A DNA stretch of 64,000 bases from IMGVR_UViG_3300028394_002328:1-64000; one strand, 5' to 3'; positions 30,788 to 64,000 are shown, counted from the stretch's first letter. Translations and numbers: made by a program. Notes: a model not told the origin generated them from the sequence alone.

Positions 30788-30794
30788 CTAAATA
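30788..30794 (+). promoter_or_regulatory. Putative late promoter (CTAAATA) heading the enzyme operon
   Basis: Intergenic, followed by AGGAG RBS and ATG 30811. Confidence 0.45.
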
Positions 30795-30810
30795 CTCGTA
30801 GGAGAGTATT

Positions 30811-31116
30811 ATGGATACTAAAACACTAATTGCAGATGCTAAAGCTAGATTTAGTCATAATGCAGCCAAATCTTATTTGAAAGACAAGTATGACAGCAAA
30901 TTTATTGTTGCTGATCAAGGTGGACTTTGGCGCGCCAATTTAGAAACGATTAATTTTTTAAATTCTGTAACCGATGAAACGGTTATTTTAATTGATACAT
31001 TTAATAATCCTGTACAAGTAAATAGACAGGAATTGAAAGATAAATTGTATGCTACATACAATGATGGTATGTCTAGTTGGTATCAAGAATGGGTTGAATT
31101 AGAGAATAAACGATGA
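30811..31116 (+). CDS. Hypothetical protein (possible tail-assembly chaperone-like)
   Basis: 101-aa ORF with AGGAG RBS; ATGA overlap with the next gene. Confidence 0.55.
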   Translation: MDTKTLIADAKARFSHNAAKSYLKDKYDSKFIVADQGGLWRANLETINFLNSVTDETVILIDTFNNPVQVNRQELKDKLYATYNDGMSSWYQEWVELENKR

Positions 31117-31913
31117 GAGGTGTTCTCTTATTTGCGTTTAACAGCCCAAAATTTAATTACTATGATATGGCTGTGGCTACGGCTAAACGTGCTAATCACT
31201 TTTTAAATTTACCAGTAACATTAGTTACGGATAATGAATCATTGCCTGAGAATCCTACTTACACTTTTGATAAGGTTATAATCACCGAGCCTGACAGAAA
31301 TAATAAGCGTGATTGGGGAGTATGGATAAACAAGGGAAGATATCGTGCATATGAGTTCAGTCCTTATGATGAGACTATACTCTTAGATGCAGATTATGTT
31401 ATTAATTCTAATAAATTATTAGATACTTTTAATTTACCTACAGATTTCTGTTGCCACGATACTACAAGTTTTTTAATGAATCCTGACGCTACCCAAGAGG
31501 TATTGAGTGGATATAGTTTTAAAACTCTATGGGCTACTGTTATTACTTTTAAAAAAGATATTAGGGCCCGTCAAGTTTTTGATTGCCTTAAAATGGTTCA
31601 GGATAATTTTGACCATTACTCAAATATACATGGGTTTATCGCAAATACTTTTAGAAACGATTACGCATTGACACTAGCACTAAGAATAGTTAATGGACAT
31701 TTAGATAAAAAGGAAGATATTATACCATGGAATTTAGTACACATTGGAAAGAATACGACTATCTATCCTGATACCGATGATGAATTTAATGTAGAATACA
31801 CTGTCATGTTTGATAATTGGAAAAGAGGAAAAATTCGTAAAGAATTTATTACAATTAAAGATACTGACTTCCATGTCATGAATAAAGAAAACATGTTGGG
31901 GTTAATTAAATGA
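31113..31913 (+). CDS. GT-A fold glycosyltransferase-like protein (GT8/nucleotide-diphospho-sugar transferase-like)
   Basis: 'SPYDETILLDADY' DxD motif; 'RNDYALTLA'; 'DFHVMNK'. Confidence 0.7.
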   Translation: MRGVLLFAFNSPKFNYYDMAVATAKRANHFLNLPVTLVTDNESLPENPTYTFDKVIITEPDRNNKRDWGVWINKGRYRAYEFSPYDETILLDADYVINSNKLLDTFNLPTDFCCHDTTSFLMNPDATQEVLSGYSFKTLWATVITFKKDIRARQVFDCLKMVQDNFDHYSNIHGFIANTFRNDYALTLALRIVNGHLDKKEDIIPWNLVHIGKNTTIYPDTDDEFNVEYTVMFDNWKRGKIRKEFITIKDTDFHVMNKENMLGLIK

Positions 31914-32707
31914 GTCAAGGGTTTGTTATAATGGCACAGAATACCAGTGAAGTAGATTATGTGAAGTGTGCCGAAACATTAGCAATAAGTATTCATAAAG
32001 TAATGCCATATGCGAATGTTTCTATTGTAACCAATGATTCTGTGAATTATTCTAAATTTGATCAGGTTATCCCATTACCACATGGTGACTTAGATATAAA
32101 TGGTAAATGGAAACTAATCAATGATTGGCAAGTGTATGAAGCTAGTCCATATGATGAGACCATTAAATTAGAATCAGATATGATTATTCCCCGTAATATC
32201 ATGCATTGGTTTGATGTGTGTGGACAACAGGATATGGTTCTGTGTACTACTATTAGAAATTTAAAACAAGAAATTTCAAAAGTGCGAGGGTATCGTAGGT
32301 TCATTGATGAAAATAAATTACCTGACGTTTATAATGCTATTACCTATTTCAAAAAATCTACTACTGCTAAAACTTTTTTTGAAATTGTAAGAGATATTTT
32401 TGAAAATTGGGAAGATTATAAAAGTACGTTGAAGTGTAACCCGCAAGAGCCAGTTAGCACTGATTGGGTGTACAGCATAGCGGCACACATAATCGGTAAA
32501 GAAAAAACTACTATACCTTCATTTACTGAAATGAGTATGATACATATGAAACAATTTATAAATGGTAACCCAACTGAAAATTGGACAGATACTTTTGTAT
32601 ATGAATGCTTACCTAATCAAATAAGAATACAAACAGTGCCACAAGTTTATCCACTTCATTATCATGTTAAGAACTTTTGTGATAAAATTATGCGAGGATA
32701 TGAATGA
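31910..32707 (+). CDS. GT-A fold glycosyltransferase-like protein, paralog of the preceding gene
   Basis: 'SPYDETIKLESDM' (ExD variant); 'STDWVYSIA'; 'PLHYHVK'. Confidence 0.65.
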   Translation: MSQGFVIMAQNTSEVDYVKCAETLAISIHKVMPYANVSIVTNDSVNYSKFDQVIPLPHGDLDINGKWKLINDWQVYEASPYDETIKLESDMIIPRNIMHWFDVCGQQDMVLCTTIRNLKQEISKVRGYRRFIDENKLPDVYNAITYFKKSTTAKTFFEIVRDIFENWEDYKSTLKCNPQEPVSTDWVYSIAAHIIGKEKTTIPSFTEMSMIHMKQFINGNPTENWTDTFVYECLPNQIRIQTVPQVYPLHYHVKNFCDKIMRGYE

Positions 32708-33033
32708 GCGACGATGTAGTTATTATTTGGGAAGCACCCAAAATCATACCTCCTGAATTTCGGTTATATTACGACGAAAAGGGTAATGTTATTTGCTATA
32801 GTTGTCAACAGTTAGAAGGCAATTATATTGTAATTGATGCATTAACTTATGCTATAGCAAGACCTGATGTAAGAATCATTGATGGAAAAATTTCAACAGT
32901 AGCACCTGATGCAGTAGTATATAAATTAATGCCATCAGATGATGGTACTGCTTGTGCTTCAGAAGATATTAGCATTATTTCAGACGGGTCAATAGAAACA
33001 ACTAAGTGGAAATTAAGAATTTATGAGTTATGA
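32704..33033 (+). CDS. Hypothetical protein
   Basis: 109-aa ORF overlapping both neighbours. Confidence 0.6.
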   Translation: MSDDVVIIWEAPKIIPPEFRLYYDEKGNVICYSCQQLEGNYIVIDALTYAIARPDVRIIDGKISTVAPDAVVYKLMPSDDGTACASEDISIISDGSIETTKWKLRIYEL

Positions 33034-33973
33034 TATAGTTGATGTAGCTGATTTAGATTGCGTATATCTTAGCTATGATGAGCCACAGAAAGAAGAATTT
33101 TGGCTCAAAATTAAAAATATGATTCCATGGGCTAAAAGAGTTGACGGAGTAAAAGGTAGTGATGCAGCACATAAAGCAGCAGGCGAGGCTAGTGATACTG
33201 AAAGATTCATTCTAATCGACGGGGATAATATGCCTGATGAATCATTTTTTAATCTTCAATTAGACTTTACTGACAAAGATCCTAAATATCATCAAGCACA
33301 GTTTCGTTGGAAAGCAATTAACGCTGTCAATGGATTACGGTATGGCAATGGTGGTATGAGCAGTTGGACAAAAACTTATGTCAGGGACATGCAAACACAT
33401 GAACACCAAAAAAACGGTGATCTATCTCGTGTTGCTGATTTTTGTTTAGATAGTGCTGACAATTTGTATTGGGCTATGTATGATTGCTATAGTACTACAT
33501 ACCCTAACTATACTCCTTTCCAAGCATGGCGTGCTGGTTTCCGCGAAGGTGTTAAGATGTGCTTGAATCGGGGTGCAGTCCCAACTATAGATGAGTTTAA
33601 AGAAACAGTAGCAAGTAGAAATTTAAACAATCTTACTATATGGCACAATGTTGGTGCAGACGTTGATAATGGTATGTGGGCAATATATGGCGCAAGACTT
33701 GGTACATATATGACTATGCTAACTGCTTGGGAACATATTAATGTGCAGTGGTTTGACAACTACCCAGTACTATGGGAAGAACATAAAGATAAAGACCCAG
33801 AGCGTGAATCAACGTTACTAGGAGTTGCTCTACACGATAAACTTGGATTGCCTATGTGTACTCTAGGAAAAGAGCAAAGCAAATTTTTCAAACGTCATTA
33901 TAACGCAGATAAACATAATTTAGGTCCTTTGATTACTGAAATGGATGTGATTCGTAGAATCGAAGGATGGTGA
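33023..33973 (+). CDS. GT-A-like (glycosyltransferase-related) protein
   Basis: 'VYLSYDEP...KRVDGVKGSDAAHKAA...FILIDGDN': Rossmann-like start with a DxD motif; 'QAWRAGFREGVKM'. Confidence 0.6.
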   Translation: MSYDIVDVADLDCVYLSYDEPQKEEFWLKIKNMIPWAKRVDGVKGSDAAHKAAGEASDTERFILIDGDNMPDESFFNLQLDFTDKDPKYHQAQFRWKAINAVNGLRYGNGGMSSWTKTYVRDMQTHEHQKNGDLSRVADFCLDSADNLYWAMYDCYSTTYPNYTPFQAWRAGFREGVKMCLNRGAVPTIDEFKETVASRNLNNLTIWHNVGADVDNGMWAIYGARLGTYMTMLTAWEHINVQWFDNYPVLWEEHKDKDPERESTLLGVALHDKLGLPMCTLGKEQSKFFKRHYNADKHNLGPLITEMDVIRRIEGW

Positions 33974-35373
33974 TGAGTAACGAACAAAAACGAATAAAAG
34001 ACATTAAAATTAAAATAGAAAATGAAGTAGGTCCTACTTTTTGTCTAGCCAAATGGCATCATGTCACAATGTATCTACAATCAGGTGAAACACACAGTTG
34101 TTATCACCCTCAACCACACAAAATTCCATTAAGCGAAATAATTGATAACCCTTCAGCACTTCATAATACTAGTGAAAAAAAAGAAGAACGCAAGTTAATG
34201 TTAGATGGTGGTAAACCCAGTGGTTGCCAATATTGTTGGAACATTGAAGCAATGGGTCCTGACTATATTAGCGACAGGCATATTCGTAATGCCAGTATTT
34301 TTACTGAAGAAAGATATGAGCAGACTACCAAAGGTCTTTGGAATCAAAACATAAACCCAGAATACATTGAAATTAACTTTGGAAACGAATGTAATTTTAA
34401 ATGTGGTTACTGTCATCCAAAATATAGTACTAGTTTTTATAAAGAGATTGAAAAGTATGGTCCTGTGACCACAGTGCAAAATCATCGTTGTGATGTAGAT
34501 TGGATGAAACTTTATCAACGTGAAGATGACAATCCATATGTTGACGCATTTTGGAAATGGTGGCCCGAACTTCGCAAAACACTAACCATTATGCGTATTA
34601 CAGGTGGTGAGCCAACTCTACACAAGTCTACATGGCAATTGTTAGATTCAATTGAACAGGACCCTATGCCATGGTTAGAATTAAACATTAATAGTAACTT
34701 AGGAACCAAACCACTACTTATAGAAAGACTATCTGAAAAAGTTAAAAATCTTACTGACAGTGGTAAAATTAAAAGTTTTAAGTTGTTCACCAGCATGGAT
34801 ACTTGGGGCAAGCGAGCCGAGTATATTCGTACTGGGTTAGACTTAGAGTTATGGGAACAAAACTTTCATACCTACCTTAAAAACACTGATAGTCCTATTA
34901 CTTTTATGATTACATTTAATATCTTTAGTGTAACTACTTTTAAAAGTTTCCTTGAAAAATTTATTGAATGGCGTAAAATTTATGGTTGGTATGATGATCC
35001 GGCTAACCCACAACACCGTGTAAGATTTGATACCCCTTATCTCAGAGATCCTATTCAGTATGATATGAATATTTTACCTAAAGAAGAGTTTATGCCATAT
35101 ATGCATGAAGCATTATCTTATATGAAAGATAATACCGATGACACTAGAGCAGATGCGTTTAGTACGATTGAATATGAAAAATTCAAACGTGTAGTAGATT
35201 ATATGGCTGAAACAGCCTATTCAGAGGAAAAATTGTTACAAGGACGTAGAGACTTTTATAATTGGTTCAATGAGTTAGATGAGCGTAGAGAAACGGATAT
35301 GCTATCTATCTTCCCTGAATACTTGGGTTTCTATCGCATGTGTCAAGAAATAAATTCACTTAATCCACTATGA
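33973..35373 (+). CDS. Radical SAM enzyme with N-terminal twitch-like domain (variant, copy 1)
   Basis: CNFKCGYC motif, 'ITGGEP', N-terminal 'FCLAKW...SCYH...CQYC'. Start 33973 (TGATG overlap, GAAGGA RBS) preferred over 33967. Confidence 0.9.
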   Translation: MSNEQKRIKDIKIKIENEVGPTFCLAKWHHVTMYLQSGETHSCYHPQPHKIPLSEIIDNPSALHNTSEKKEERKLMLDGGKPSGCQYCWNIEAMGPDYISDRHIRNASIFTEERYEQTTKGLWNQNINPEYIEINFGNECNFKCGYCHPKYSTSFYKEIEKYGPVTTVQNHRCDVDWMKLYQREDDNPYVDAFWKWWPELRKTLTIMRITGGEPTLHKSTWQLLDSIEQDPMPWLELNINSNLGTKPLLIERLSEKVKNLTDSGKIKSFKLFTSMDTWGKRAEYIRTGLDLELWEQNFHTYLKNTDSPITFMITFNIFSVTTFKSFLEKFIEWRKIYGWYDDPANPQHRVRFDTPYLRDPIQYDMNILPKEEFMPYMHEALSYMKDNTDDTRADAFSTIEYEKFKRVVDYMAETAYSEEKLLQGRRDFYNWFNELDERRETDMLSIFPEYLGFYRMCQEINSLNPL

Positions 35374-36626
35374 ATAAAGAACATTTACTAAAAGAAAGCA
35401 AATCATTTTGCATGTTACCTTGGGTTCATTTCACTACTAGTCCTAGTGGTGATGCACTACCGTGTTGTATAGCAAAAACACCTATTGATGAGTTTGGATT
35501 TCATCGTCCGTTGGGTAATACTACTAGAGAAAGTATGATAGAAATTGTCAATTCTAAAGGAATGAACCAACTTAGACTTGACATGCTATCAGATGTTAAG
35601 AATCCTATGTGTTCGACCTGTCACGCACATGATGATTTATTATTGGGAAGTTTTCGTTCTAGTTCAAATAAACAATACAGTAAACATTTTGATAATGTAA
35701 TTGCTTCTACAAACGAAGATGGTTCTTTATCTGAATTTAAGATGAGATATTTTGATATTAGGTTTAGTAACATATGTAACTTTAAATGTAGAACATGTGG
35801 ACCTGACTGGAGTAGTCAATGGGAACAAGAAAACATTAAAAATAATATTTACCAACATAATATTATTAAAAATAATAAAAAAGAATTTTTAGAAGAAGTA
35901 ATCAATCAAATCCCTAATATTGAAGAAGCATACTTTGCAGGAGGTGAACCTCTTATTACAGAAGAGCACTATATTCTGTTAGAAGAAATGATTAGGCAAG
36001 GTAGAACGGACACCGTGTTAAGGTATAATACAAATCTAAGTAATTTAAAATTTAAAAACAAAGACTTAATGAGTCTTTGGAAACAGTTTACAAATAATAT
36101 ACAAATTTACGCCAGTGTAGATCATTATGGGGAACGTGCTGAATATATACGACATGGGACAGATTGGACTGTAATAGAAGAAAACTTTTTATTAGCTAAA
36201 AAATCACCATATATTCAGTTACAAATGAATACAGTGTTAAGTTTGTATAATTATAAAACTTTTTTAGAATTTTATCAGTATTTGTTTGATAAAGGGCTAT
36301 ATTCATCAACAGACAATACATATTCAATATATACTATGAGTTCACCTGAATTTCTTACTTCGAATATTTTACCACAGCACCATAAAGAAGAGGGTAAAAT
36401 TAAAATATTAAAGTTGATAGATATTATGAAGTCTATGGGATTTACAAAAAAACCCAACACTCTACATTTAGTGCAGGGCATCATTGATTGGACTATAGCA
36501 CCTAGCCAAAATACATGGGAAAAATATAAAGAAGAGTTTCAAGTTAATACTGAACAACGAGATTCTCTTAGAGGGGAAAGTTTTGTTAAAACTTTCCCAG
36601 AACTTGCTGATTTAATGGGGGATTAA
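35370..36626 (+). CDS. Radical SAM enzyme with N-terminal twitch/SPASM-like domain (copy 2)
   Basis: 'FCMLPW...PCC...CSTC', CNFKCRTC, 'FAGGEP'. Confidence 0.9.
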   Translation: MNKEHLLKESKSFCMLPWVHFTTSPSGDALPCCIAKTPIDEFGFHRPLGNTTRESMIEIVNSKGMNQLRLDMLSDVKNPMCSTCHAHDDLLLGSFRSSSNKQYSKHFDNVIASTNEDGSLSEFKMRYFDIRFSNICNFKCRTCGPDWSSQWEQENIKNNIYQHNIIKNNKKEFLEEVINQIPNIEEAYFAGGEPLITEEHYILLEEMIRQGRTDTVLRYNTNLSNLKFKNKDLMSLWKQFTNNIQIYASVDHYGERAEYIRHGTDWTVIEENFLLAKKSPYIQLQMNTVLSLYNYKTFLEFYQYLFDKGLYSSTDNTYSIYTMSSPEFLTSNILPQHHKEEGKIKILKLIDIMKSMGFTKKPNTLHLVQGIIDWTIAPSQNTWEKYKEEFQVNTEQRDSLRGESFVKTFPELADLMGD

Positions 36627-39085: not shown

Positions 39086-39087
39086 AA

Positions 39088-46337: not shown

Positions 46338-46344
46338 TGTGATT

Positions 46345-48336: not shown

Positions 48337-48350
48337 ACTTAGGAATATTA

Positions 48351-52958: not shown

Positions 52959-53526
52959 GTTTGAAACGGTTATAAAAGAATATTATAACAGCCCATATGC
53001 GGTTACAACTGATTGTTGTACCCACGCTATTGAACTATGTATTAGGTTATTAAAGCCAACTGAGGTATCATGTCCAAAACACACCTACCTAAGTGTTCCA
53101 ATGACATTTGAAAAATTAAATCTAGATTGGAGATTTAAAAATTTTAAATGGAATGATTATTATTATATAACTAATAATATTATTGATGCGGCAGTATATT
53201 GGAAGCCCGATGGATATATCCCTAATACATATATGTGCTTGTCATTTCAATTTAAAAAGCATTTAAATGTGGGTAGAGGTGGCATGATATTAACCGACGA
53301 TTATGAATCTTATAAAAAATTAAAAAAGATGAGTTATGATGGTAGGCTTCCCGATATTGCATGGGCTGAACAAGACGTAGACACATTGGGTTATCATTAT
53401 TATATGACACCTGAAACTGCTGAGTTGGGTTTAGATAGATTTCACGAAGTAAAGGACATTGAACCTAGACAATGGTCTTGGAAAGACTATCCCGACTTAA
53501 CAACAATGAGTGTATTCAAATGCTAA
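52942..53526 (+). CDS. DegT/DnrJ/EryC1/StrS-like PLP aminotransferase (short form)
   Basis: 'DCCTHAI', 'IIDAA', 'SFQFKKHL..GRGGMILTDD', 'GYHYYM'. Confidence 0.8.
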   Translation: MNPILEFETVIKEYYNSPYAVTTDCCTHAIELCIRLLKPTEVSCPKHTYLSVPMTFEKLNLDWRFKNFKWNDYYYITNNIIDAAVYWKPDGYIPNTYMCLSFQFKKHLNVGRGGMILTDDYESYKKLKKMSYDGRLPDIAWAEQDVDTLGYHYYMTPETAELGLDRFHEVKDIEPRQWSWKDYPDLTTMSVFKC

Positions 53527-56200: not shown

Positions 56201-56203
56201 ATA
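56197..56203 (+). promoter_or_regulatory. Putative late promoter (GTAAATA)
   Basis: Overlaps the upstream stop; followed by AAGGAG RBS and ATG 56222. Confidence 0.45.
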
Positions 56204-56221
56204 CTTATAAGGAGCACATTT

Positions 56222-56320
56222 ATGTTTATATTTAAATGGATTAAGAATATTATCCGAGAATACAAATACCGTAAAAGAATTAAAGAATTACGCAAACGGG
56301 ATCCTTTCATATACAAATGA
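56222..56320 (+). CDS. Small basic peptide (32 aa) coupled to the carbamoyltransferase
   Basis: Translated by hand: MFIFKWIKNIIREYKYRKRIKELRKRDPFIYK*. AAGGAG RBS at 56209-56214; ATGA overlap with 56317. Confidence 0.75.
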   Translation: MFIFKWIKNIIREYKYRKRIKELRKRDPFIYK

Positions 56321-57798: not shown

Positions 57799-57809
57799 GT
57801 AATTACATC

Positions 57810-60800
57810 ATGAGAGATGTATTTTATTACGGCGAAAAACCCAACGTTCATCCAAAAGAAAAATTTGCAACTTCAATAGAAGATGCTAGGCGTCAATCAA
57901 CGACAGAACATTTTTGGATAATCAATGAATTCTGTGACTATCGCAATTTTGATTGGGATTTTGATTTTGAATTCCTGCCCGATGAAGATGTATGGGCAGA
58001 AGACCATAACAATGTATGGCCTAGTCAACATCAAAAAGACAGTGGCACTTGGCTATGTTCAAAGAAAAACAGTGATATAATTATCTATCGTGCTGATGTT
58101 GACCCTGTTATTCGTAAGAATATAAAGAACGATCACTGGGTATTATTAGATTTAATTGATGAAAATAAATTTGATTTTAGTTGGCACCCTGATCCAACTG
58201 ATCCTCCTTATAATTATAAATGGGGATGTAAGTTTTTTCCAGTAGAATTACAGGCATGTTTAGAATATCGTATTGATGGTGCGTTCAAAACAAAATACAT
58301 GAAAGAAATTGTAGAATTGTTACCACAGTATGATAGATGGGTAGAAGTACAAGAGATAGATAAATTAGCATTTGATATGTCATGGAGACCCAATCCATTG
58401 GATCCCCCTATGAATTATATATGGGGTAACAAATATATTGATGGTAATCTACGTTCAACTCTAGAATACCGTATACCAGGTGCAATTGATACAAAATACA
58501 TGCCTGATTTAATTTCGGTAGTACCTGAATGGGATAAGTGGGTAGAAGTACAAAAAGTAAATAAGTCTACATTTGATTTTACATGGAGACCTGATCCACG
58601 TGAACCTGCGTATATCTATACTTGGGGTAACAAATATATCGATTCTGAGCTAAGGCCAACACTTGAATACCATTGTGAAGGGGCTACTGAACGCAAGTAT
58701 ATGTCTAATGATGTAGAGGTATTACCTGAATGGGATAAGTGGGAAATACTTCATCCTATAGATAAATCTACATTTAATTTTACATGGAGACCTGACCCTA
58801 GAGAACCAAATTTAAATTATGTATTTGGTAATAATCAGTATGACAGTACAAAAATGCCTACCATTATTTACAAAATGGAAGGTGCTACCGATGAAAAGCA
58901 TATGCCGAGTAATGCTAAATTGTTACCACAGCCTAACAGGTTTCAACATTTAGAAGATAGTTATGGCATAGATTATTCTTGGGTTCCTGATCCTACTAGT
59001 CCTCCTTATATATATGTTTGGGGTAATCAATGGAATAACCCTCAAGATAAAATATCTATTCAATATGTAGTTGAAGGAGCAACAGAATACAATTATATGG
59101 CAGAACGTGCTATTCGTAAGCCATGTAAAGATAATTGGGAAATACCTAACAATGTGGATATTACTGGGTTTGATTTTAGTTGGGAACCTAGTCCAGCAGA
59201 TCAACCTTATATCTATCAATTTGGCACTCAATGGCAAAAGACAGGTGGACCAAGATATCTAACACCTGGCGTACATAAAAATAGTGATGTTAAGTATGTT
59301 GATTTACAAAAAGTAAAAATGTTACCTAGTAAAGATAACTTCATTATCTTAGACAATGTTGTTGTAGATGATTTTGATTATAGTTGGCATTCCGATGAAA
59401 CAGAAGAGCCATACATATATGTATTTGGTAATAATTTATACTCTGCTGAAATTATGCCAACTATTCAGTATGTACCTAAAAATGCAGTCAGAGCAGCATC
59501 AGGCAAATCAATTGGACAAATAAAATATGTCAATGATATTATCGCTACGTTAGGAGAGAATAGAAATAATTGGGTAATTAATCAACCAATAGATGAAACT
59601 AAATTTGATTTTAGTTGGGTACCCAACCCCAAAGACCCAGCTTACATATACCGTTGGGGTAACAAATATATTTCTAATGTATATAAACCAACTATTGAAT
59701 ATATAGTTGAAGGTGCAACTGAAATAAAATACATGGACGACAGTGTTGCTGTATTACCCGAGTTTGATCGTTGGTATATCCCATCTAATATTGATGATAC
59801 TGGTTTTGATTATACATGGAGACCTGATCCACTAGAACCTGTATTAATTTGGCAATTTGGTACACAATGGCAAAAGACGGGCGGACCTAGATATACCATG
59901 CCTGGTGCCATTGAAGTCAAATATGTTAGTATACACAAGGTAAAAGCATTGCCTAATAAAGACAATTGGACTATACCTAAAAATATAGATATATCTAATT
60001 TTGATTTCAGTTGGCATCCTGATGATACTTCACCTCCTTACATATATAGGTTTCCCACTCAGTGGGCAATGAGTGGTGGTCCTATTTACACTGTAGTTGG
60101 AGCAACAGAAGTAAAGTATATAGATACCTTTAGGGCTAAAGCACTACCTAGTATAGATAATTGGGAATTCGATTCTAATAATATTGATTTGTCTAACTTT
60201 GACTTTAGTTGGCATCCATACGCAGAAGACGAGCCGTTCATATACCAATTTGGTACTCAATGGCAAAAGACAGGTGGTCCTAGATATTTAACTCCAGGAG
60301 TTCATAAAAATAGTCCTGTAAAATATATTGATACACGCATTATAAAAGCAAAAAGATTACCTAATAAAAATAATTTTATAATCATTGATAATAATGTAAT
60401 TGACAATTTTGACTACTCATGGCATCCTGATGAAACAGAGGAGCCATTTGTTTATATATTTGGTAACACTCAATATCCAGCCGAGATAATGCCTACAATA
60501 AAATATGTTGTAGAAGGTGCTACTCAAATAAAATATATTAATGATGTAGTTGCTGTACTAGGTGAAAATAAGAAAGTTTGGCATATCCCTGATAATATTG
60601 ATGATAGTTCATTTGATTATACTTGGGTGCCTAATCCCAAGGACCCGCCGTATATATACGAATTTGGTACGCACTGGCAAAAAACTGGTGGTCCAATCTA
60701 TGCTGTTAAAGATGCCACTGAAGTCAAATATATTGATTATCAAAAAGTAACCGCATTGCCTAATAAAGATAATTGGACTATACCTGGTAACGTGGATATA

Positions 60801-63800
60801 TCTGAATTTGATTTTAGTTGGCATCCAGATTCTACAAGTCCACCATATATCTATAGATTTCCCACTCAGTGGGCAATCAGTGGTGGTCCAACATATACTA
60901 TAATTGGTGCAACAGAGATAAAATATTTGGATACGATTAAGGTCAAAGCGCTACCTTGCAAAGATAATTGGGAATTTGATTCCAATATTATTGACAATGA
61001 AAACTTTGACTTTAGTTGGCATCCATATGCGGAAGACGAACCTTTTATATACCAATTTGGAACCCAGTGGCAAAAAACAGGTGGACCAAGGTATTTAACA
61101 CCTGGTATACATAAAAATAGCCCTGTAAAATATATTGACACTAGAATTATAAAAGCAAATAGATTACCTAATAAAGATAATTTTATCATCATTGATAATA
61201 ATGTAATTGATAGCTTTGATTACTCATGGCACCCTGATGAAACCGAAGAGCCATTTGTGTATATATTTGGTAACAATCAGTATCCAGCTGAGATAATGCC
61301 TACACTAAAATATGTTGTAGAAGGTGCTACAAAAATAAAGTATGTTAATGATATAGTTGCTATACTAGGTGAAAACAAAACTTATTGGGAAATACCTGAA
61401 GGTGTAGATGTAATTGAGTTTGATTTTAGTTGGGTACCTAATCCTAAAGATCCTGCATACATTTATGAATTTGGTACACAATGGAATGATAGGGGAGGTC
61501 CAAAATATGTTCCACCTAATAAAGGGCTTAGATTGGGTTCGGGTAAGATCATTGGTCAATATAAGTATGTCAGTGATCAAATTGCTACCTTGGGGGAAAA
61601 TAAAACAAATTGGATTATACCTGATAATATTGATATTACGGATTTTGATTTTAGTTGGGTTCCGCATCCCGATGACCCACCGTATATATATGAGTTTGGT
61701 ACACAGTGGCAAAAAACAGGTGGTCCAAAGTATGTAGTTTCAGGTTATACTGAAGTTAAATATGTTGCTACCCTTAAAGCTAGAATATTACCTAACAAAG
61801 ATAATTGGGAAGTACCTGAAAATATTGACAGTGCGAGTTTTGATTTTAGTTGGCATCCAGATGCAACTGAAGAACCCTATGTATATAAATTTGGAACCCA
61901 GTGGCAAAAAACAGGTGGACCAAGGTATTTAACACCTGGTATACATAAAAATAGCCCTGTAAAATATATTGATCCTAAAGTTCTTAGTAGTAAGAGATTG
62001 CCTAATAAAGAAAATTTTACTATAATAGATAATATTATTGTTGCTCATTTTGACTATAGTTGGCATCCTGACGAAACCGAAGAACTATATGTATATGTAT
62101 TTGGTAATAATTATTATCCAGCAGAGATAATGCCAACTGTTCAATACATACCTAAAGGTGCGATAATATCGGCATCAGGTAACCCCATTGAACAAATAAA
62201 ATATGTTAGTGGTGTGGTCGCTATACTAGGTGAAAATAAAACCAATTGGATAATACCTAAAGATATTGATCAACCCTCTTTTGATTTTAGTTGGGTTCCG
62301 CACCCAAACGATGAACCTTACATATATCAATTTGGTACACAACATCAAAAAACAGGTGGGCCGCAGTATGTACCAACTGCTATACCTAGGTTAGCATCAG
62401 GTTCTGCAATTGGTCAGGTTAAATATGTTGATGGTATAAAGGCTAAAAAGCTACCTAATAAAACTAATTGGACTAATCCTAGCAAAGTGGACGTTAGTAC
62501 ATTTGATTTCAGTTGGCACCCGGATGATACGTCACCTCCTTACATATATCAATTTGGTACATTATTAGATAGAGAAGATGGACCTAGGTATATGACTCCA
62601 AAGACTAATGGAGTGATTGTTTATTTGGAAAAAGTTGAAAAGGAAATTGAGGAAGTAGTAGAAGAAATTGTAAAAGACACTTTTCCCAAATATTATATTA
62701 CTACTACACTTGATGATTTAGTAAAACAACATCCAAATGAAATGTTTTGGGCATTAAACCCTGATTTGGATTATAGTGAATTTGATTTTGATTGGAGACC
62801 CAATATTGACAGATCACAATATGAGTCTGAATACGTTCATGCATTTGGTTCGAGTGAAAGTGAAAAAACACAAACTTATCTAGTTAATAGTACAATGTGG
62901 GAGAAAGGTCTTAGAGAATTAAATTGGGTTGTTGATAAAAAACTTGATGATGAAACCTTGTTTAAAATGTTCAAAAAGCCTGACATATTCTTCGTAGATA
63001 AAAGCAACCTAGAATCTCAAGCAAGGTACGAACAACTTAAAACTAAGTTTCCCAACATACAAAAAACACGTTACCTAAACAGTTGGGTCGATACTATCAA
63101 TCGTTGCATCAACAGGGCAAGTAATAACTTGTGTTGGATATTAAACAGCGAGCTAGACTATACTAATTTTGATTTTGATTATTATCCTAATCCATGGCAA
63201 ATGAAAATGGTCCATGTATTTGGAACACAATGGAGTCATTGGGGAACTACATTCATGATCAACCGTGAGACATTTGCTGAAGATACCAAGTGGATTAAAA
63301 TAATAGAGCATTTGAATAATCTTAATTTCGTAAAAGATAGAACTGCAATTGCTACTGATAATATATATGACATATATGTAGTAGACCATGGTAATAAAGA
63401 AACTGCAAAAGTTGTTCAACAATTAACCAATAAAGCATCAGGTAAATTAGTTAATACTATACCATACTCTGAAAATTATCTACTGACCTTTAAGAAATTA
63501 TTAAAACAACTTCTAGAAAAGAAAGAACACTATATTTGGATATGCAGTAGCATATGTGATTATAGCGATTTTGATTTTAGTTATGTTTGTGATCCTTTTG
63601 CCCGTGAGCAATTACATGTATTTCCTAGCGATAAACAAAAGTTAGGTGATACCTTTTTAGTTAATATTAATAAGTTTCGTGAATTAATTGATAATATGAC
63701 TTTATTAAATGAGTATAATAAAATCAATTATAACCAACATCAAACCGTTAAAAGATTAGATTCACCTACTATAATTACTAATTACGATTCGCATGTATTA

Positions 63801-64000
63801 AGTGTAATGGAAGACTTTGACTTCCCGTATGCTGTATTCTTATCAGAAGATAATAAAGATTTAAAAGTTACCGATGAAGAACCAATTAGTTTATGGAGTA
63901 GTGATACTAAGAACATTGTTATTACTAGTACTGGTGGAACAAGAATAGTAGTTCCTAAAGAAGCTAAAAATTATGTAGACACACAATTGTATGATTATCC
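57810..64000 (+). CDS. Giant tandem-repeat protein (>2,060 aa, 3'-truncated) with degenerate GT-A-like C-terminal domains; absent from the ORF track
   Basis: Translated by hand from ATG 57810 (MRDVFYYGEKPNVHPKEK...); I found no in-frame stop before the window end (...KNYVDTQLYDY). Confidence 0.88.
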   Translation, partial: MRDVFYYGEKPNVHPKEKFATSIEDARRQSTTEHFWIINEFCDYRNFDWDFDFEFLPDEDVWAEDHNNVWPSQHQKDSGTWLCSKKNSDIIIYRADVDPVIRKNIKNDHWVLLDLIDENKFDFSWHPDPTDPPYNYKWGCKFFPVELQACLEYRIDGAFKTKYMKEIVELLPQYDRWVEVQEIDKLAFDMSWRPNPLDPPMNYIWGNKYIDGNLRSTLEYRIPGAIDTKYMPDLISVVPEWDKWVEVQKVNKSTFDFTWRPDPREPAYIYTWGNKYIDSELRPTLEYHCEGATERKYMSNDVEVLPEWDKWEILHPIDKSTFNFTWRPDPREPNLNYVFGNNQYDSTKMPTIIYKMEGATDEKHMPSNAKLLPQPNRFQHLEDSYGIDYSWVPDPTSPPYIYVWGNQWNNPQDKISIQYVVEGATEYNYMAERAIRKPCKDNWEIPNNVDITGFDFSWEPSPADQPYIYQFGTQWQKTGGPRYLTPGVHKNSDVKYVDLQKVKMLPSKDNFIILDNVVVDDFDYSWHSDETEEPYIYVFGNNLYSAEIMPTIQYVPKNAVRAASGKSIGQIKYVNDIIATLGENRNNWVINQPIDETKFDFSWVPNPKDPAYIYRWGNKYISNVYKPTIEYIVEGATEIKYMDDSVAVLPEFDRWYIPSNIDDTGFDYTWRPDPLEPVLIWQFGTQWQKTGGPRYTMPGAIEVKYVSIHKVKALPNKDNWTIPKNIDISNFDFSWHPDDTSPPYIYRFPTQWAMSGGPIYTVVGATEVKYIDTFRAKALPSIDNWEFDSNNIDLSNFDFSWHPYAEDEPFIYQFGTQWQKTGGPRYLTPGVHKNSPVKYIDTRIIKAKRLPNKNNFIIIDNNVIDNFDYSWHPDETEEPFVYIFGNTQYPAEIMPTIKYVVEGATQIKYINDVVAVLGENKKVWHIPDNIDDSSFDYTWVPNPKDPPYIYEFGTHWQKTGGPIYAVKDATEVKYIDYQKVTALPNKDNWTIPGNVDISEFDFSWHPDSTSPPYIYRFPTQWAISGGPTYTIIGATEIKYLDTIKVKALPCKDNWEFDSNIIDNENFDFSWHPYAEDEPFIYQFGTQWQKTGGPRYLTPGIHKNSPVKYIDTRIIKANRLPNKDNFIIIDNNVIDSFDYSWHPDETEEPFVYIFGNNQYPAEIMPTLKYVVEGATKIKYVNDIVAILGENKTYWEIPEGVDVIEFDFSWVPNPKDPAYIYEFGTQWNDRGGPKYVPPNKGLRLGSGKIIGQYKYVSDQIATLGENKTNWIIPDNIDITDFDFSWVPHPDDPPYIYEFGTQWQKTGGPKYVVSGYTEVKYVATLKARILPNKDNWEVPENIDSASFDFSWHPDATEEPYVYKFGTQWQKTGGPRYLTPGIHKNSPVKYIDPKVLSSKRLPNKENFTIIDNIIVAHFDYSWHPDETEELYVYVFGNNYYPAEIMPTVQYIPKGAIISASGNPIEQIKYVSGVVAILGENKTNWIIPKDIDQPSFDFSWVPHPNDEPYIYQFGTQHQKTGGPQYVPTAIPRLASGSAIGQVKYVDGIKAKKLPNKTNWTNPSKVDVSTFDFSWHPDDTSPPYIYQFGTLLDREDGPRYMTPKTNGVIVYLEKVEKEIEEVVEEIVKDTFPKYYITTTLDDLVKQHPNEMFWALNPDLDYSEFDFDWRPNIDRSQYESEYVHAFGSSESEKTQTYLVNSTMWEKGLRELNWVVDKKLDDETLFKMFKKPDIFFVDKSNLESQARYEQLKTKFPNIQKTRYLNSWVDTINRCINRASNNLCWILNSELDYTNFDFDYYPNPWQMKMVHVFGTQWSHWGTTFMINRETFAEDTKWIKIIEHLNNLNFVKDRTAIATDNIYDIYVVDHGNKETAKVVQQLTNKASGKLVNTIPYSENYLLTFKKLLKQLLEKKEHYIWICSSICDYSDFDFSYVCDPFAREQLHVFPSDKQKLGDTFLVNINKFRELIDNMTLLNEYNKINYNQHQTVKRLDSPTIITNYDSHVLSVMEDFDFPYAVFLSEDNKDLKVTDEEPISLWSSDTKNIVITSTGGTRIVVPKEAKNYVDTQLYDY
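58140..62620 (+). repeat. ~22 tandem coding repeats of ~195-231 bp (consensus W.IP..ID...FDFSWHP....PYIY.FG.QWQKTGGP.Y......KY......LP.K)
   Basis: FD(F/Y)(S/T)W motif starts at about 58170, 58371, 58572, 58773, 58968, 59169, 59373, 59604, 59805, 60000, 60198, 60408, 60612, 60807, 61005, 61215, 61419, 61644, 61839, 62049, 62280 and 62502. Confidence 0.88.
61054..61972 (+). repeat. 85-bp perfect direct repeat (61054-61138 and 61888-61972)
   Basis: Identical sequence 'aatttggaacccagtggcaaaaaacagg...ccctgtaaaatatattga' at both sites. Confidence 0.85.

What the first reader, a model, noticed from the sequence alone, without database searches (positions are those of the whole stretch)
30788..64000. 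Phage-encoded ~27-kb glycan build-and-tailor pathway next to the tail genes (candidate virion glyco-hypermodification system)
Seen: directly after the tail fibres come ~25 tightly coupled genes. They encode 3 GT-A-like and 4 GT10-like domains, a nucleotide-sugar dehydrogenase, an epimerase, a C-methyltransferase, a DegT aminotransferase, an amidinotransferase, a carbamoyltransferase, an oxygenase, 3 SGNH proteins and 7 radical SAM enzymes, and end in a giant repeat protein. Known: these families supply, transfer and decorate sugars. Inference: they form one pathway producing a heavily modified glycan. The late-type promoters, adjacency to S/T/N-rich virion proteins and lack of nucleotide kinases, thymidylate-synthase-like genes or exporters in the window favour virion decoration over DNA modification or a secreted metabolite.
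Basis: partly seen in the sequence, partly recalled or inferred. Interest (0 to 1): 0.92.

Follow-up and report, generated by a model that had tools for sequence, protein, structure and literature searches.

The report
Hypervariable sugar-tailoring island in jumbo phage
An uncultured giant phage carries, right after its tail-fibre genes, about 26 genes for soluble sugar-building, sugar-decorating and radical enzymes. The island is shared but heavily reshuffled among hundreds of related phages, it most likely makes an elaborate glycan on a phage protein, and its target is unproven.

Summary
Most of the gene inventory is real. Seven radical SAM genes have intact Cys motifs. Five of them belong to the uncharacterised N-terminal-twitch family NF033640. 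Also confirmed are a StrB1-like amidinotransferase, a NodU/TobZ-type carbamoyltransferase, an NDP-hexose C-methyltransferase, an SDR epimerase and a nucleotide-sugar dehydrogenase. The DegT-like protein is conserved but only half the usual length.

The four "GT10-like" domains are paralogous GT-B-fold glycosyltransferases of an unnamed viral family, and GT10 membership is not shown. Two GT-A-like genes are GT8-like. The third (p316) and the SGNH and oxygenase labels have only weak support.

The last gene encodes a 2298-aa protein that ends at contig position 64,706, beyond the window. It has 22 tandem repeats and a C-terminal p316-like domain without the DxD motif.

A conserved anchor (fibre genes, two GT8-like genes, p316) is present in 80 of 80 related contigs. 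Downstream content varies widely: 1-7 twitch radical SAM copies, optional amidino, amino and C-methyl genes, and a terminal protein of 451-3084 aa. No cluster protein has a membrane segment, and no thymidylate-synthase-like gene is linked.

Best reading: cytoplasmic synthesis of a strain-specific, heavily tailored glycan on a phage (probably virion) protein. The target is inferred, and DNA glycosylation or a radical SAM protein-modification role remain open.

The parts
27920..30762 (+). Conserved anchor, part 1: three virion or fibre-like proteins (206, 408 and 317 aa). The 317-aa protein is 28% Ser+Thr and is a candidate acceptor.
   Evidence: PHROG virion-structural hits. Homologues lie beside the tail sheath and a structural protein in RsoM2USA. 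Present in 75-79 of 80 related loci. Composition.
30811..31116 (+). 101-aa conserved protein of unknown function (p101).
   Evidence: No family hit. Present in 79 of 80 loci.
31113..32707 (+). Two paralogous GT8-like GT-A glycosyltransferases (266 and 265 aa) with a DxD motif.
   Evidence: 25% identical to each other. The family has 2218 representatives at 50% identity. A profile of 56 of them hits glycogenin at E 6e-5 with DxD aligned. A few members hit Pfam Mannosyl_trans3 or Nucleotid_trans. Present in 80 of 80 loci. Homologues are RsoM2USA ORF353 and ORF352.
32704..33033 (+). 109-aa conserved protein (p109), fused to p316 in some relatives.
   Evidence: Present in 80 of 80 loci. Fused as a 421-aa ORF in L089.
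33023..33973 (+). p316: the most conserved gene of the island. Possible GT-A-like enzyme with a DGD motif, and a paralogue of the C-terminal domain of the terminal giant protein.
   Evidence: 77-94% identical in 80 loci, with 432 IMG/VR hits. AF2 pLDDT 66 with a beta-alpha-beta-alpha-beta-DGD start. Weak Foldseek hits, all to nucleotide-diphospho-sugar transferase folds, E >= 0.16. No Pfam, NCBIfam or PDB sequence hit. RsoM2USA is the only GenBank phage record that carries it.
33967..40365 (+). Tandem array of five N-terminal-twitch radical SAM paralogues (468, 418, 409, 410 and 425 aa).
   Evidence: NF033640, E 1e-93 to 1e-109, 314-365 bits against a cut-off of 170. N-terminal SPASM/twitch followed by the radical SAM domain. 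Conserved Cys residues. CX3CX2C present. Copy number is 1-7 in relatives.
40350..41327 (+). Short radical SAM protein (325 aa).
   Evidence: Pfam Radical_SAM E 5e-6. Weak MoaA similarity. Found with N_Twi radical SAM genes in phages and Bdellovibrionota at 39-41% identity.
41314..42543 (+). GT-B-fold glycosyltransferase paralogue 1 (409 aa).
   Evidence: 42% identical to 46382-47524, whose fold was modelled.
42522..43891 (+). Two SGNH-like proteins (216 and 240 aa) with a GDS motif. Accessory genes.
   Evidence: Block I G-D/C-S and a G-x-N block are present. Profile against an SGNH hydrolase, 8zbc, gives E 0.018. Replaced by other ORFs in the near-identical contig L002.
43888..46337 (-). Minus-strand accessory operon: 116-aa unknown protein, NDP-hexose C-methyltransferase (402 aa) and SDR epimerase/dehydratase (301 aa).
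   Evidence: Pfam Methyltransf_13, _23 and _14, and Epimerase, all above threshold. Closest NCBIfam is ADP-heptose 6-epimerase, below its cut-off. ATAAATAA lies at 46344 on the minus strand, just upstream. Absent from L007 and L011.
46382..47524 (+). GT-B-fold glycosyltransferase paralogue 2 (380 aa), the one modelled.
   Evidence: AF2 pLDDT 92, pTM 0.90. Foldseek PDB hits to OtsA/TPS, SdgB and glycogen synthase at E 1e-4, probability 1.0. BFVD hits to uncultured phage proteins at E 2e-18 and to a Mimivirus-clade protein at 7e-16. More than 386 homologues, none with a Pfam domain. No match in 50,697 phage records.
47527..48336 (+). SGNH-like protein (269 aa, GCS motif). Core gene that follows the GT-B gene.
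   Evidence: Conserved next to the GT-B gene in L007, L010 and L011.
48333..50705 (+). Fusion of a nucleotide-sugar dehydrogenase (N-terminal ~410 aa) with GT-B paralogue 3 (C-terminal ~350 aa).
   Evidence: Pfam UDPG_MGDP_dh_N and the central domain. TIGR03026 E 6e-38, below its cut-off. C-terminal half aligns in A1. Split into two genes in L007 and L011.
50709..52958 (+). Class-B (B12-binding) radical SAM enzyme, 749 aa, probable methyltransferase, with a ~300-aa unassigned C-terminal extension.
   Evidence: Pfam B12-binding and Radical_SAM above threshold. NCBIfam similarity to radical SAM C- and P-methyltransferases, below the equivalog cut-offs. 73-88% identical in L007, L010 and L011.
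52942..53526 (+). Short DegT-like PLP aminotransferase homologue (194 aa). Accessory gene.
   Evidence: Pfam DegT E 2e-15, covering only profile positions ~165-240 of 360. Weak LegC/PseC similarity. Same length in relatives. Absent from L003.
53472..54482 (+). Amidinotransferase of the StrB1/AGAT type. Accessory gene.
   Evidence: PDB 1bwd E 1e-53 over the full length, with the C-terminal FHC motif aligned. Also HsvA, AGAT and SxtG. Absent from L003.
54479..56200 (+). 573-aa protein: N-terminal weak cupin or Asp/Arg-hydroxylase-like region plus GT-B paralogue 4. Accessory gene.
   Evidence: Asp_Arg_Hydrox E 0.004, below threshold. C-terminal half aligns in A1. Absent from L003.
56317..57798 (+). 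Carbamoyltransferase of the NodU/CmcH/TobZ family. Core gene that almost always abuts the terminal protein.
   Evidence: Pfam Carbam_trans_N and _C, E 7e-35 and 1e-46. Lies immediately upstream of the terminal protein in 23 of 28 loci where the 5' end of that gene is present.
57810..64000 (+). Terminal modular protein of 2298 aa, ending at contig position 64,706. It has an N-terminal domain, 22 tandem repeats of 65-77 aa (residues 110-1624), and a C-terminal ~650 aa that ends in a p316-like domain in which DGD is replaced by WGK or FAK.
   Evidence: Repeat profile against a PKD domain gives only E 0.038. C-terminal domain against p316: 26% identity and hhalign E 5e-55. DxD is lost across the family. 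Length is 451-3084 aa in relatives. No match in GenBank phage records.

Best explanation
The island is a late-expressed, entirely cytoplasmic glycosylation system of a clade of uncultured T4-like jumbo phages.

Proposed order of events (inferred except where marked):
1. Host nucleotide sugars are converted into unusual donors. The enzymes are the nucleotide-sugar dehydrogenase, the SDR epimerase/dehydratase, the NDP-hexose C-methyltransferase and the DegT-like aminotransferase.
2. At least six glycosyltransferase domains assemble an oligosaccharide directly on a soluble phage protein. These are two GT8-like GT-A domains and four GT-B domains, with p316 as a possible seventh.
3. Tailoring enzymes decorate the sugar or glycan. 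The StrB1-like amidinotransferase makes guanidino groups on amines. The NodU/TobZ-like carbamoyltransferase makes O-carbamates. The B12 radical SAM enzyme adds methyl groups. The SGNH-like proteins add or remove acyl groups.
4. The five N-terminal-twitch radical SAM paralogues and the short radical SAM enzyme carry out radical oxidation, epimerisation or C-C/C-H chemistry.

The conserved anchor (fibre proteins, two GT8-like genes, p316, first radical SAM) would lay down the base of the glycan. The hypervariable downstream genes would give each phage strain a different decoration, much as O-antigen loci do for bacteria.

The most likely acceptors are the adjacent Ser/Thr-rich fibre proteins or the terminal modular protein. 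The variable-length repeat stalk and DxD-less GT-like head of that protein suggest a displayed fibre or a glycan/nucleotide-sugar-binding arm.

Shown: the enzyme families, their solubility, their linkage and variability, and the late-promoter-like motifs. Inferred: the substrates of every enzyme, the protein acceptor and the virion location.
For: Families.

Glycosyltransferase folds: GT-B. GT8-like.

Position: the island follows gp5/gp25/gp6 and the fibre genes on the same strand. RsoM2USA has the same order, baseplate, 2541-aa virion protein, sheath, structural protein, fibre-like, GT-A x2, p316, radical SAM, with the structural proteins confirmed by mass spectrometry (PMC8504454).

Conservation and variability: anchor in 80 of 80 loci, downstream region variable. 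Near-identical contigs differ by whole accessory modules. The minimal version in L089 still has a kinase and nucleotidyltransferase pair, typical of sugar or head-group activation.

Other: no membrane segment in any product. ATAAATA(A/C) motifs lie before both structural genes and cluster operons, while the motif is depleted elsewhere. No thymidylate-synthase-like gene in 1.87 Mb of window plus related loci.

Precedents: virus-encoded virion glycosylation in mycobacteriophages (Freeman 2023, cited in PMC12619734). The precedent of clade-specific glycosylation clusters in giant viruses is from my own knowledge.
Against: - No glycan, acceptor site or virion proteome is available for any member.
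- RsoM2USA mass spectrometry covered only the ten most abundant bands.
- The N_Twi radical SAM family has no characterised member. Its nearest solved relatives match only around the cluster-binding motif.
- In Bdellovibrionota and in RsoM2USA the radical SAM-carbamoyltransferase module occurs without neighbouring glycosyltransferases, so it may act on something other than a glycan.
- SPASM/twitch radical SAM enzymes often modify peptides.
- p316, the most conserved gene, could not be assigned a fold with confidence.
- The DegT homologue is half-length.
- Phage DNA-glycan clusters can also neighbour structural genes.
Confidence: 0.5

Rival explanations
1. DNA hypermodification: the glycosyltransferases and tailoring enzymes build a decorated glycan on a modified base of the phage genome, to block host nucleases.
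For: Phage GTs of both GT-A and GT-B folds put mono- to trisaccharides, including uronic and ulosonic acids, on DNA. Such clusters are found in neighbourhoods with structural genes, and partner epimerases supply the donors (bioRxiv 10.1101/2023.12.21.572611; PMC13326640). All products here are soluble. RsoM2USA encodes two thymidylate-synthase-like genes elsewhere in its genome (PMC8504454).
Against: No 5mC dioxygenase, C5-methyltransferase, thymidylate-synthase-like hydroxymethylase or nucleotide kinase domain was hit among the cluster ORFs that Pfam scanned. No thymidylate-synthase-like gene lies in the window or within 10 kb in 95 related loci. Six to seven GT domains exceed the one to three sugars known on DNA. 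Strong linkage to fibre genes and to a giant modular protein is not a feature of the known DNA pathways. Only 64 kb of a 335-kb genome was seen.
Confidence: 0.13
2. Protein (RiPP-like) modification: the N-terminal-twitch radical SAM paralogues cross-link, epimerise or otherwise modify residues of a phage protein. The aromatic-rich tandem repeats of the terminal protein are the most attractive substrate. The sugar enzymes would be a separate co-located module.
For: SPASM/twitch radical SAM enzymes are typically peptide maturases; weak NCBIfam similarities include DynA, PqqE, YydG and CcpM. The terminal protein always closes the cluster. It carries 22 repeats with invariant or nearly invariant Trp, Tyr and Phe. 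In four cases, more radical SAM copies go with a longer protein: window 5 copies and 2298 aa, L003 1982 aa, L011 1823 aa, L089 1 copy and 898 aa.
Against: RsoM2USA and the Bdellovibrionota loci have N_Twi radical SAM genes but no detectable homologue of the repeat protein. In relatives the terminal protein can be as short as 451 aa, too short to hold more than a few repeats. The radical SAM genes are interleaved with sugar enzymes. No leader-peptide-like gene or RiPP recognition element was identified, though this was not searched systematically. The n=4 trend is confounded by overall cluster size.
Confidence: 0.12
3. A diffusible or nucleotide-bound small molecule: the enzymes make an aminoglycoside- or nucleoside-antibiotic-like compound, or a modified nucleotide sugar, used against host defences or competing microbes.
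For: The family set (StrB1-type amidinotransferase, TobZ/NodU-type carbamoyltransferase, B12 radical SAM methyltransferase, twitch radical SAM, DegT, NDP-sugar C-methyltransferase, GT-B) is the one used in aminoglycoside and nucleoside antibiotic pathways (pathway knowledge is my own). The bacterial radical SAM-carbamoyltransferase-methyltransferase islets lack obvious GTs.
Against: No cyclitol synthase, resistance gene or exporter is present. Expression appears to run with late structural genes. Tight conservation next to fibre genes in hundreds of phages and the terminal giant protein are unexplained by this reading.
Confidence: 0.1
4. Host-envelope remodelling: the soluble phage GTs and tailoring enzymes act on the host's lipid-linked O-antigen or capsule intermediates, to mask receptors and so prevent superinfection or loss of progeny on debris.
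For: Cytoplasmic GTs of O-antigen pathways are also soluble or peripheral. Phage-encoded serotype-converting GTs are known (reviewed in Markine-Goriaynoff 2004, cited). A Bdellovibrionia N_Twi radical SAM locus ends with a polytopic membrane protein that might be a GT-C-type transferase.
Against: No initiating phosphoglycosyltransferase, flippase, polymerase or acyl-carrier component is present, and there is no membrane segment at all. The phage is lytic-type and T4-like, with late-promoter-like signals. The cost is ~34 kb. The function would depend on a compatible host pathway across very diverse hosts (freshwater, marine, Ralstonia).
Confidence: 0.07

Closest known systems
Virion glycosylation of mycobacteriophages (Freeman et al. 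2023, Cell Host Microbe; cited in PMC12619734)
   Same: Phage-encoded soluble glycosyltransferases lie beside structural genes and glycosylate virion proteins in the cytoplasm. The glycans shield the particle.
   Different: Those systems have one to a few GTs and no sugar-tailoring suite. Here there are at least six GT domains, seven radical SAM enzymes, and amidino-, carbamoyl- and C-methyl-transferases. The locus is hypervariable and ends in a giant modular protein. Glycosylation is unproven here.
Clade-specific glycosylation gene clusters of giant viruses (chlorovirus capsid glycans; Mimivirus fibril glycans). From my own knowledge.
   Same: These viruses encode both nucleotide-sugar synthesis and GTs that act independently of host membrane machinery. 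Cluster content differs between clades. The fibril or fibre proteins are the targets. A Mimivirus-clade protein is a structural relative of the GT-B family (E 7e-16).
   Different: Those are eukaryotic viruses. No radical SAM arrays are reported in them. The sugars known there are made by classical NDP-sugar enzymes.
Phage DNA glycan hypermodification clusters (Pyle et al., bioRxiv 10.1101/2023.12.21.572611; glycosylated 5-hydroxycytosine, PMC13326640)
   Same: GT-A and GT-B enzymes are paired with sugar epimerases. They are soluble and sometimes lie near structural genes.
   Different: Those clusters are defined by a neighbouring 5mC dioxygenase with a C5-methyltransferase, or by a thymidylate-synthase-like hydroxymethylase or hydroxylase with a nucleotide kinase. 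None of these is linked here. Their glycans are no longer than three sugars.
Aminoglycoside-type tailoring enzymes: StrB1, TobZ, GenK-like B12 radical SAM enzymes, BtrN-like twitch radical SAM enzymes, DegT-family aminotransferases. Family knowledge is my own.
   Same: The same enzyme families co-occur and act on amino sugars or cyclitols. StrB1 is the best solved match of the amidinotransferase.
   Different: There is no inosose or cyclitol synthase, resistance gene or export gene. The twitch domain is N-terminal here (family NF033640), not C-terminal as in BtrN or MoaA. The setting is a phage structural-gene context.
NCBIfam NF033640 'twitch domain-containing radical SAM protein' in Bdellovibrionota and Bacteroidota
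   Same: The five paralogues are clear members. The bacterial homologues also form tandem arrays and also sit with a short radical SAM gene, a carbamoyltransferase and B12 radical SAM genes.
   Different: The bacterial loci examined lack the GT8-like, p316 and GT-B genes and the giant protein. The family has no known function in either setting.

Membership tests
NCBIfam NF033640 N_Twi_rSAM (five genes, 33967-40365) | Whole-protein score above the curated cut-off of 170 bits | tested here: met
   314-365 bits, E 1e-93 to 1e-109, covering the full profile.
NCBIfam NF033640 N_Twi_rSAM (five genes, 33967-40365) | N-terminal Cys-rich twitch/SPASM-like domain followed by a radical SAM core with CX3CX2C | tested here: met
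   Pfam SPASM at residues ~14-85 before Radical_SAM at ~130-300 in four of the five; the 468-aa protein gave no SPASM hit. Cys16, 34, 76, 79, 131, 135 and 138 are invariant. The motif is present in all five.
GT10 alpha-1,3-fucosyltransferases (the four 'GT10-like' domains) | GT-B two-Rossmann fold | tested here: met
   AF2 pLDDT 92. Foldseek probability 1.0 to GT-B enzymes.
GT10 alpha-1,3-fucosyltransferases (the four 'GT10-like' domains) | Specific sequence or structure similarity to GT10 members | tested here: not met
   No Pfam hit of any kind. H. pylori FucT 2nzy is only rank 34, E 9e-3, probability 0.60, behind GT20, GT4 and GT3 enzymes. A profile search against PDB sequences found nothing.
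GT8 / GT-A retaining glycosyltransferases (31113-32707) | N-terminal nucleotide-binding Rossmann-like half with an aligned DxD motif | tested here: met
   A family profile (56 representatives found at E <= 1e-39 with the window genes' profile) hits glycogenin-1 at E 6e-5 over residues 6-115, with DaD aligned to DAD. The C-terminal half is not matched.
GT-A / GT2-like (p316, 33023-33973) | GT-A fold with DxD | tested here: inconclusive
   A DGD motif follows the third strand of a beta-alpha-beta-alpha-beta start. The model is only pLDDT 66. The best Foldseek E is 0.16, although the top hits are all nucleotide-diphospho-sugar transferase folds. No sequence-profile hit.
Amidinotransferase (StrB1/AGAT) (53472-54482) | Full-length homology and the C-terminal catalytic Cys motif | tested here: met
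   1bwd E 1e-53 over residues 20-333. The FHC motif is aligned.
NodU/CmcH/TobZ carbamoyltransferase (56317-57798) | Both Carbam_trans_N and Carbam_trans_C domains above the Pfam thresholds | tested here: met
   121.5 and 158.6 bits against cut-offs of 24 and 27. It is not a NodU equivalog: 126 bits against a cut-off of 1000.
Class B (cobalamin-dependent) radical SAM methyltransferase (50709-52958) | B12-binding domain followed by a radical SAM domain with CX3CX2C | tested here: met
   Pfam 42.2 and 55.9 bits, both above threshold. Motif at residue 277. No equivalog cut-off was reached, so the substrate is unknown.
Nucleotide-sugar dehydrogenase (48333-49560) | N-terminal NAD, central and C-terminal UDP-binding domains | tested here: inconclusive
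   The N and central domains are above the Pfam thresholds. The C-terminal domain was not detected. TIGR03026 scores 130.6 bits against a cut-off of 189.8.
NDP-hexose C-methyltransferase (44231-45439) | Zn-binding Methyltransf_13, SAM-binding and Methyltransf_14 domains | tested here: met
   All three are above the Pfam thresholds.
DegT/DnrJ/EryC1 aminotransferase (52942-53526) | Full-length fold-type-I PLP enzyme of ~360-400 aa | tested here: not met
   The domain score is above threshold, but the protein is 194 aa and matches only profile positions ~165-240. The short length is conserved and is not a frameshift.
SGNH/GDSL hydrolase (42522-43891, 47527-48336) | Blocks I (GDS), III (GxN) and V (DxxH), with family-level similarity | tested here: inconclusive
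   Blocks I and III are visible. Block V is plausible in two of the three proteins of the window. Best PDB profile hit is the SGNH hydrolase 8zbc at E 0.018, over block I only.
PKD/Ig-like domain (repeats of the terminal protein) | Profile similarity to PKD domains | tested here: inconclusive
   6aem E 0.038 over 44 residues. No Pfam hit. No structure prediction was possible.
Virus-encoded virion glycosylation system | Glycan demonstrably attached to a virion protein and dependent on the viral GTs | not testable with these tools
   This needs virions. RsoM2USA is the only cultured carrier of the core genes.
Phage DNA glycan hypermodification cluster | GT linked to a 5mC dioxygenase with a C5-methyltransferase, or to a thymidylate-synthase-like enzyme with a nucleotide kinase | tested here: not met
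   No such Pfam domain was hit among the cluster ORFs that were scanned. tblastn with two thymidylate-synthase-like proteins of RsoM2USA found nothing in the window plus 95 related loci, 1.87 Mb in all. The remaining 271 kb of the genome was not examined.

The most novel reading that the evidence does not exclude
The tandem, rapidly diversifying arrays of N-terminal-twitch radical SAM enzymes (1-7 copies per phage) are a previously unrecognised radical 'editing' toolkit. They would act after or during glycan assembly, or directly on the repeat protein, so that each phage strain gets a unique, chemically exotic virion surface carrying guanidino, carbamoyl, C-methyl and radical-derived groups. 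The terminal protein would be a ruler-like fibre whose pseudo-glycosyltransferase head holds or presents that glycan. This would be a new enzyme function for an uncharacterised family. It would also be the most complex glycosylation machinery known in a bacteriophage.
Probability: 0.3. Interest if true: 0.9.

Novelty: new variant of a known kind. Interest (0 to 1): 0.78.

Why it matters
Virus-encoded glycosylation is known from giant eukaryotic viruses and, in simple form, from mycobacteriophages. This would be a far larger, modular and hypervariable version in tailed phages that are abundant in metagenomes. p316 gives 432 hits in IMG/VR, and the GT8-like family has more than 4,400 protein clusters at 90% identity.

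It points to three sizeable protein families with no annotation at all: the viral GT-B family, p316 and the repeat protein. It also gives the uncharacterised radical SAM family NF033640 a testable context.

The strain-level reshuffling next to the fibre genes suggests that surface chemistry is under diversifying selection, which would bear on host range, grazing and immune or defence evasion. Ralstonia phage RsoM2USA carries the conserved core and is culturable, so the question can be tested directly.

Tried and rejected
- Nucleotide search of the island against 50,697 phage records found no match.
- Alternative genetic code or read-through, as an explanation for the odd SPASM-before-radical-SAM order. 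Rejected: a 6344-aa ORF is open under code 11, and the order is the defining feature of NF033640.
- DegT as a frameshifted pseudogene. Rejected: the 194-aa length is conserved.
- Profile searches of the GT-B paralogues and of p316 against PDB sequences gave only spurious hits, MetN and BamA. A two-sequence GT-A profile also failed. The GT8 link appeared only with 56 diverse representatives.
- The word-index homologue search with the GT-A profile returned only close relatives and no annotation.
- Idea that the 65-77-aa repeats derive from the DxD-proximal segment of p316. hhalign against p316 is not significant (probability 1.8%). Against the terminal protein's own C-terminal domain it is only suggestive (probability 67%, 23 columns).
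- The T4 late promoter consensus TATAAATA is depleted rather than enriched. The sigma-70 scan is no different from shuffled sequence.
- Literature searches found nothing relevant. The term sets were radical SAM + jumbo phage + glycosyltransferase, twitch domain + phage, and radical SAM + carbamoyltransferase + phage. The 'moraphage' paper describes a different lineage.

Full report
**Origin and setting**

The window is the first 64 kb of JGI metagenome contig Ga0304730_1000008, also IMG/VR UViG_3300028394_002328, which is 335,035 bp long. Gene coordinates are identical in window and contig. The island has no nucleotide-level match among 50,697 GenBank phage records.

The left part of the window encodes T4-type baseplate proteins. 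These are a gp5-like hub at 1084-4827, a gp25-like protein at 4835-5284 and a gp6-like wedge at 5337-8708. The gp6 homologue is 31-33% identical to those of jumbo myoviruses such as Rak2, Atu_ph07, XbC2 and Phosso.

A 6344-aa ORF follows at 8717-27751. After it come three virion or fibre-like proteins at 27920-30762. This is a distant, low-GC (about 33%) member of the T4-like jumbo phages.

**What is in 30811-64000**

There are 26 ORFs, nearly all overlapping by a few bases. Three (43888-46337) are on the minus strand.

Assignments with significant support:
- Five paralogous radical SAM proteins at 33967-40365. The SPASM/twitch-like Cys domain lies before the radical SAM core. This unusual order is the defining trait of NCBIfam NF033640 'twitch domain-containing radical SAM protein'. 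All five match it at 314-365 bits against a cut-off of 170.
- A short radical SAM protein (40350-41327) and a B12-binding class-B radical SAM protein (50709-52958). All seven radical SAM genes keep CX3CX2C.
- A three-domain NDP-hexose C-methyltransferase and an SDR epimerase/dehydratase.
- A nucleotide-sugar dehydrogenase, with N and central domains detected.
- A NodU/CmcH/TobZ-type carbamoyltransferase.
- An amidinotransferase whose best solved relative is StrB1 of streptomycin biosynthesis (E 1e-53, active-site FHC aligned).

A confident AF2 model (pLDDT 92) has a GT-B fold. Its closest solved structures are trehalose-phosphate synthases, SdgB and glycogen synthase (E about 1e-4). A GT10 fucosyltransferase ranks only 34th. 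The family has more than 386 members with no Pfam domain. It is absent from deposited phage genomes. It has structural relatives among uncultured phages and a Mimivirus-clade virus. 'GT-B fold, family unassigned' is the defensible label.

The genes at 31113-32707 are GT8-like. Their family has 2218 representatives at 50% identity. A profile of 56 of them hits glycogenin at E 6e-5 with the DxD aligned.

The third 'GT-A-like' gene, p316 (33023-33973), could not be placed. It has no sequence hit. Its AF2 model is mediocre, with a beta-alpha-beta-alpha-beta-DGD start. Foldseek matches are only sub-significant, though all are to nucleotide-diphospho-sugar transferase folds.

The SGNH labels rest on motifs and one E 0.018 hit. 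The 'oxygenase' rests on a sub-threshold hit. The DegT homologue is half-length, and that length is conserved.

No product has a hydrophobic segment compatible with a membrane helix.

**The terminal protein**

The last ORF continues beyond the window to contig position 64,706 and encodes 2298 aa. It has:
- an N-terminal domain;
- 22 tandem repeats of 65-77 aa with invariant or nearly invariant Trp, Tyr, Phe, Pro and Gly, which resemble PKD domains only weakly (E 0.038);
- a C-terminal ~650 aa whose last ~230 aa are homologous to p316 (26% identity; hhalign E 5e-55).

In this domain the DGD of p316 is replaced by WGK or FAK throughout the family. It is therefore probably not a metal-dependent transferase.

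Across 28 related loci where the 5' end of this gene is present, the protein ranges from 451 to 3084 aa. In 23 of them the carbamoyltransferase gene abuts it. The repeats thus behave as an expandable spacer between conserved ends.

**Conservation and variability**

p316 gives 432 hits in IMG/VR. The 80 best are 77-94% identical. In all 80, the block of fibre-like proteins, p101, the two GT8-like genes, p109 and p316 is present in the same order.

Downstream content differs sharply:
- N_Twi radical SAM copies range from 1 to 7 within 10 kb (52 loci).
- The first radical SAM gene is at least 70% identical in 19 loci, 30-50% identical in 18, and replaced in 15.
- The short radical SAM, the GT-B genes, B12 radical SAM genes and the carbamoyltransferase come and go.

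Contigs that share an identical GT-B protein with the window still differ by whole modules. L003 lacks the DegT, amidinotransferase and 573-aa genes. L002 lacks two SGNH-like genes.

More distant jumbo contigs of 230-355 kb, 45-60% identical, keep the core order. They swap accessories such as extra B12 radical SAM genes, a Methyltransf_21 gene, and split rather than fused dehydrogenase and GT-B genes.

A minimal version (L089) has p316, one radical SAM, a 271-aa protein, an APH-type kinase, an NTP_transf_3 nucleotidyltransferase, the carbamoyltransferase, an 898-aa terminal protein and a methyltransferase.

Marine relatives are present among contigs mis-binned into bacterial MAGs.

**A cultured relative**

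Ralstonia phage RsoM2USA is the only GenBank phage record with p316. Its gene order runs from the baseplate and ORF361, a 2541-aa virion protein seen by mass spectrometry, through the sheath and structural protein ORF356. A fibre-like protein follows, then ORF353 and ORF352 (GT8-like), ORF350 (p316, 39% identical), ORF349 (N_Twi radical SAM, 36%) and ORF348, a p316 paralogue (PMC8504454).

A second locus about 90 kb away holds another N_Twi radical SAM gene and the carbamoyltransferase (44% identical), two genes apart. The GT anchor and the radical SAM-carbamoyltransferase module are therefore separable units.

**Bacterial homologues**

N_Twi radical SAM genes 30-37% identical occur mainly in Bdellovibrionota and Bacteroidota, often in tandem. 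They sit with the short radical SAM gene (39-41% identical), carbamoyltransferases and B12 radical SAM genes.

One Bdellovibrionia islet also holds an SDR, a methyltransferase, a classical radical SAM-SPASM protein and a polytopic membrane protein, but no recognisable GT. No solved structure is close to the family.

**Expression signals**

The T4 late consensus TATAAATA is strongly depleted, at 2 sites against 19 expected. The variant ATAAATA(A/C) occurs nine times. Six of these lie, correctly oriented, just upstream of gene starts. They are at 4824 (gp25), 5313 (gp6), 27755 (before a small ORF ahead of the 206-aa gene), 28542, 46344 (minus) and 46370 (plus). Near-variants lie at about 30789 and 56199.

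This fits co-expression with late structural genes, but it is inference.

**Interpretation**

The enzyme families are those that make, transfer and decorate sugars. There are at least six GT domains. Everything is soluble. The unit is linked to fibre genes in hundreds of phages. Its variable part behaves like a surface-antigen locus.

I therefore favour cytoplasmic assembly of a strain-specific, heavily tailored glycan on a phage protein, probably a fibre or the terminal modular protein (confidence 0.5). The target is not shown.

The main rivals are:
- DNA glycan hypermodification (0.13). Published clusters can neighbour structural genes, but their defining base-activating enzymes are absent here and in 95 related loci.
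- A RiPP-like role of the twitch radical SAM enzymes on the aromatic-rich repeat protein (0.12).
- An aminoglycoside-like small molecule (0.10).
- Remodelling of the host envelope (0.07).

**Novelty**

No paper in the searchable library links radical SAM arrays, carbamoyltransferases and glycosyltransferases in jumbo phages. The components belong to known superfamilies, and virus-encoded glycosylation is a known kind. The scale, the radical SAM expansion, the hypervariability and the terminal pseudo-GT fibre make this a new variant worth experimental follow-up. RsoM2USA is the practical entry point.

Noticed in passing
window 8717-27751 (+): A single 6344-aa ORF directly follows the gp6-like wedge gene. 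It is 20% Ser+Thr and has only sub-threshold FG-GAP and E1_FCCH hits. It occupies the same position as the 2541-aa virion protein ORF361 of RsoM2USA, which was confirmed by mass spectrometry.
   Followed up: partly
window, whole: The T4 late-promoter consensus TATAAATA is strongly depleted (2 sites against 19 +/- 4 expected). The variant ATAAATA(A/C) is placed before gene starts. This suggests a shifted late-promoter consensus in this clade.
   Followed up: partly
window 56222-56317 (+) and 27768-27920 (+): Two small ORFs (~31 aa, very basic; ~50 aa) fill the only sizeable intergenic gaps. Each is preceded by a late-promoter-like motif and overlaps the next gene's start codon. They fall below the length limit used in the ORF lists here.
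   Followed up: no
L115, L123, L125, L159, L166 (GTDB genome collection): Contigs binned as Verrucomicrobia, Rickettsiales and Betaproteobacteria MAGs (TMED/MED series) carry the fibre, GT8-like, p316 and radical SAM block. They are almost certainly marine phage contigs mis-binned into bacterial genomes.
   Followed up: partly
L100, L103, L135, L138 and others (Bdellovibrionota contigs of 0.1-0.9 Mb): Predatory bacteria carry tandem N-terminal-twitch radical SAM arrays with a short radical SAM gene, a carbamoyltransferase, a methyltransferase and (in L135) a polytopic membrane protein. These form small islets between unrelated housekeeping genes. Their function is unknown.
   Followed up: partly
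window 48333-50705 compared with L007:15588-17908 and L011:12049-14386: The nucleotide-sugar dehydrogenase and a GT-B domain are fused in the window and in a UniProt 'uncultured Caudovirales phage' protein of 788 aa. They are separate adjacent genes in other relatives. The fusion suggests that the two act in sequence.
   Followed up: partly
L016 (Vibrio phage K566, 161.5-168.3 kb): A 255-kb Vibrio phage has four N_Twi-like radical SAM genes (~23% identical) clustered among hypothetical genes, near PagP-like, PnuC and nicotinamide phosphoribosyltransferase genes and not next to recognised tail genes.
   Followed up: no
window 43888-44238 (-): A 116-aa acidic helical protein always travels with the C-methyltransferase (73-97% identical in relatives). 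It has no family assignment.
   Followed up: no
PMC5332604 (Nishimura et al. 2017): A marine T4-like environmental genome of 183 kb was reported to carry 12 radical SAM genes together with Fe-S assembly genes. It may be a marine counterpart of the radical SAM expansion seen here.
   Followed up: no
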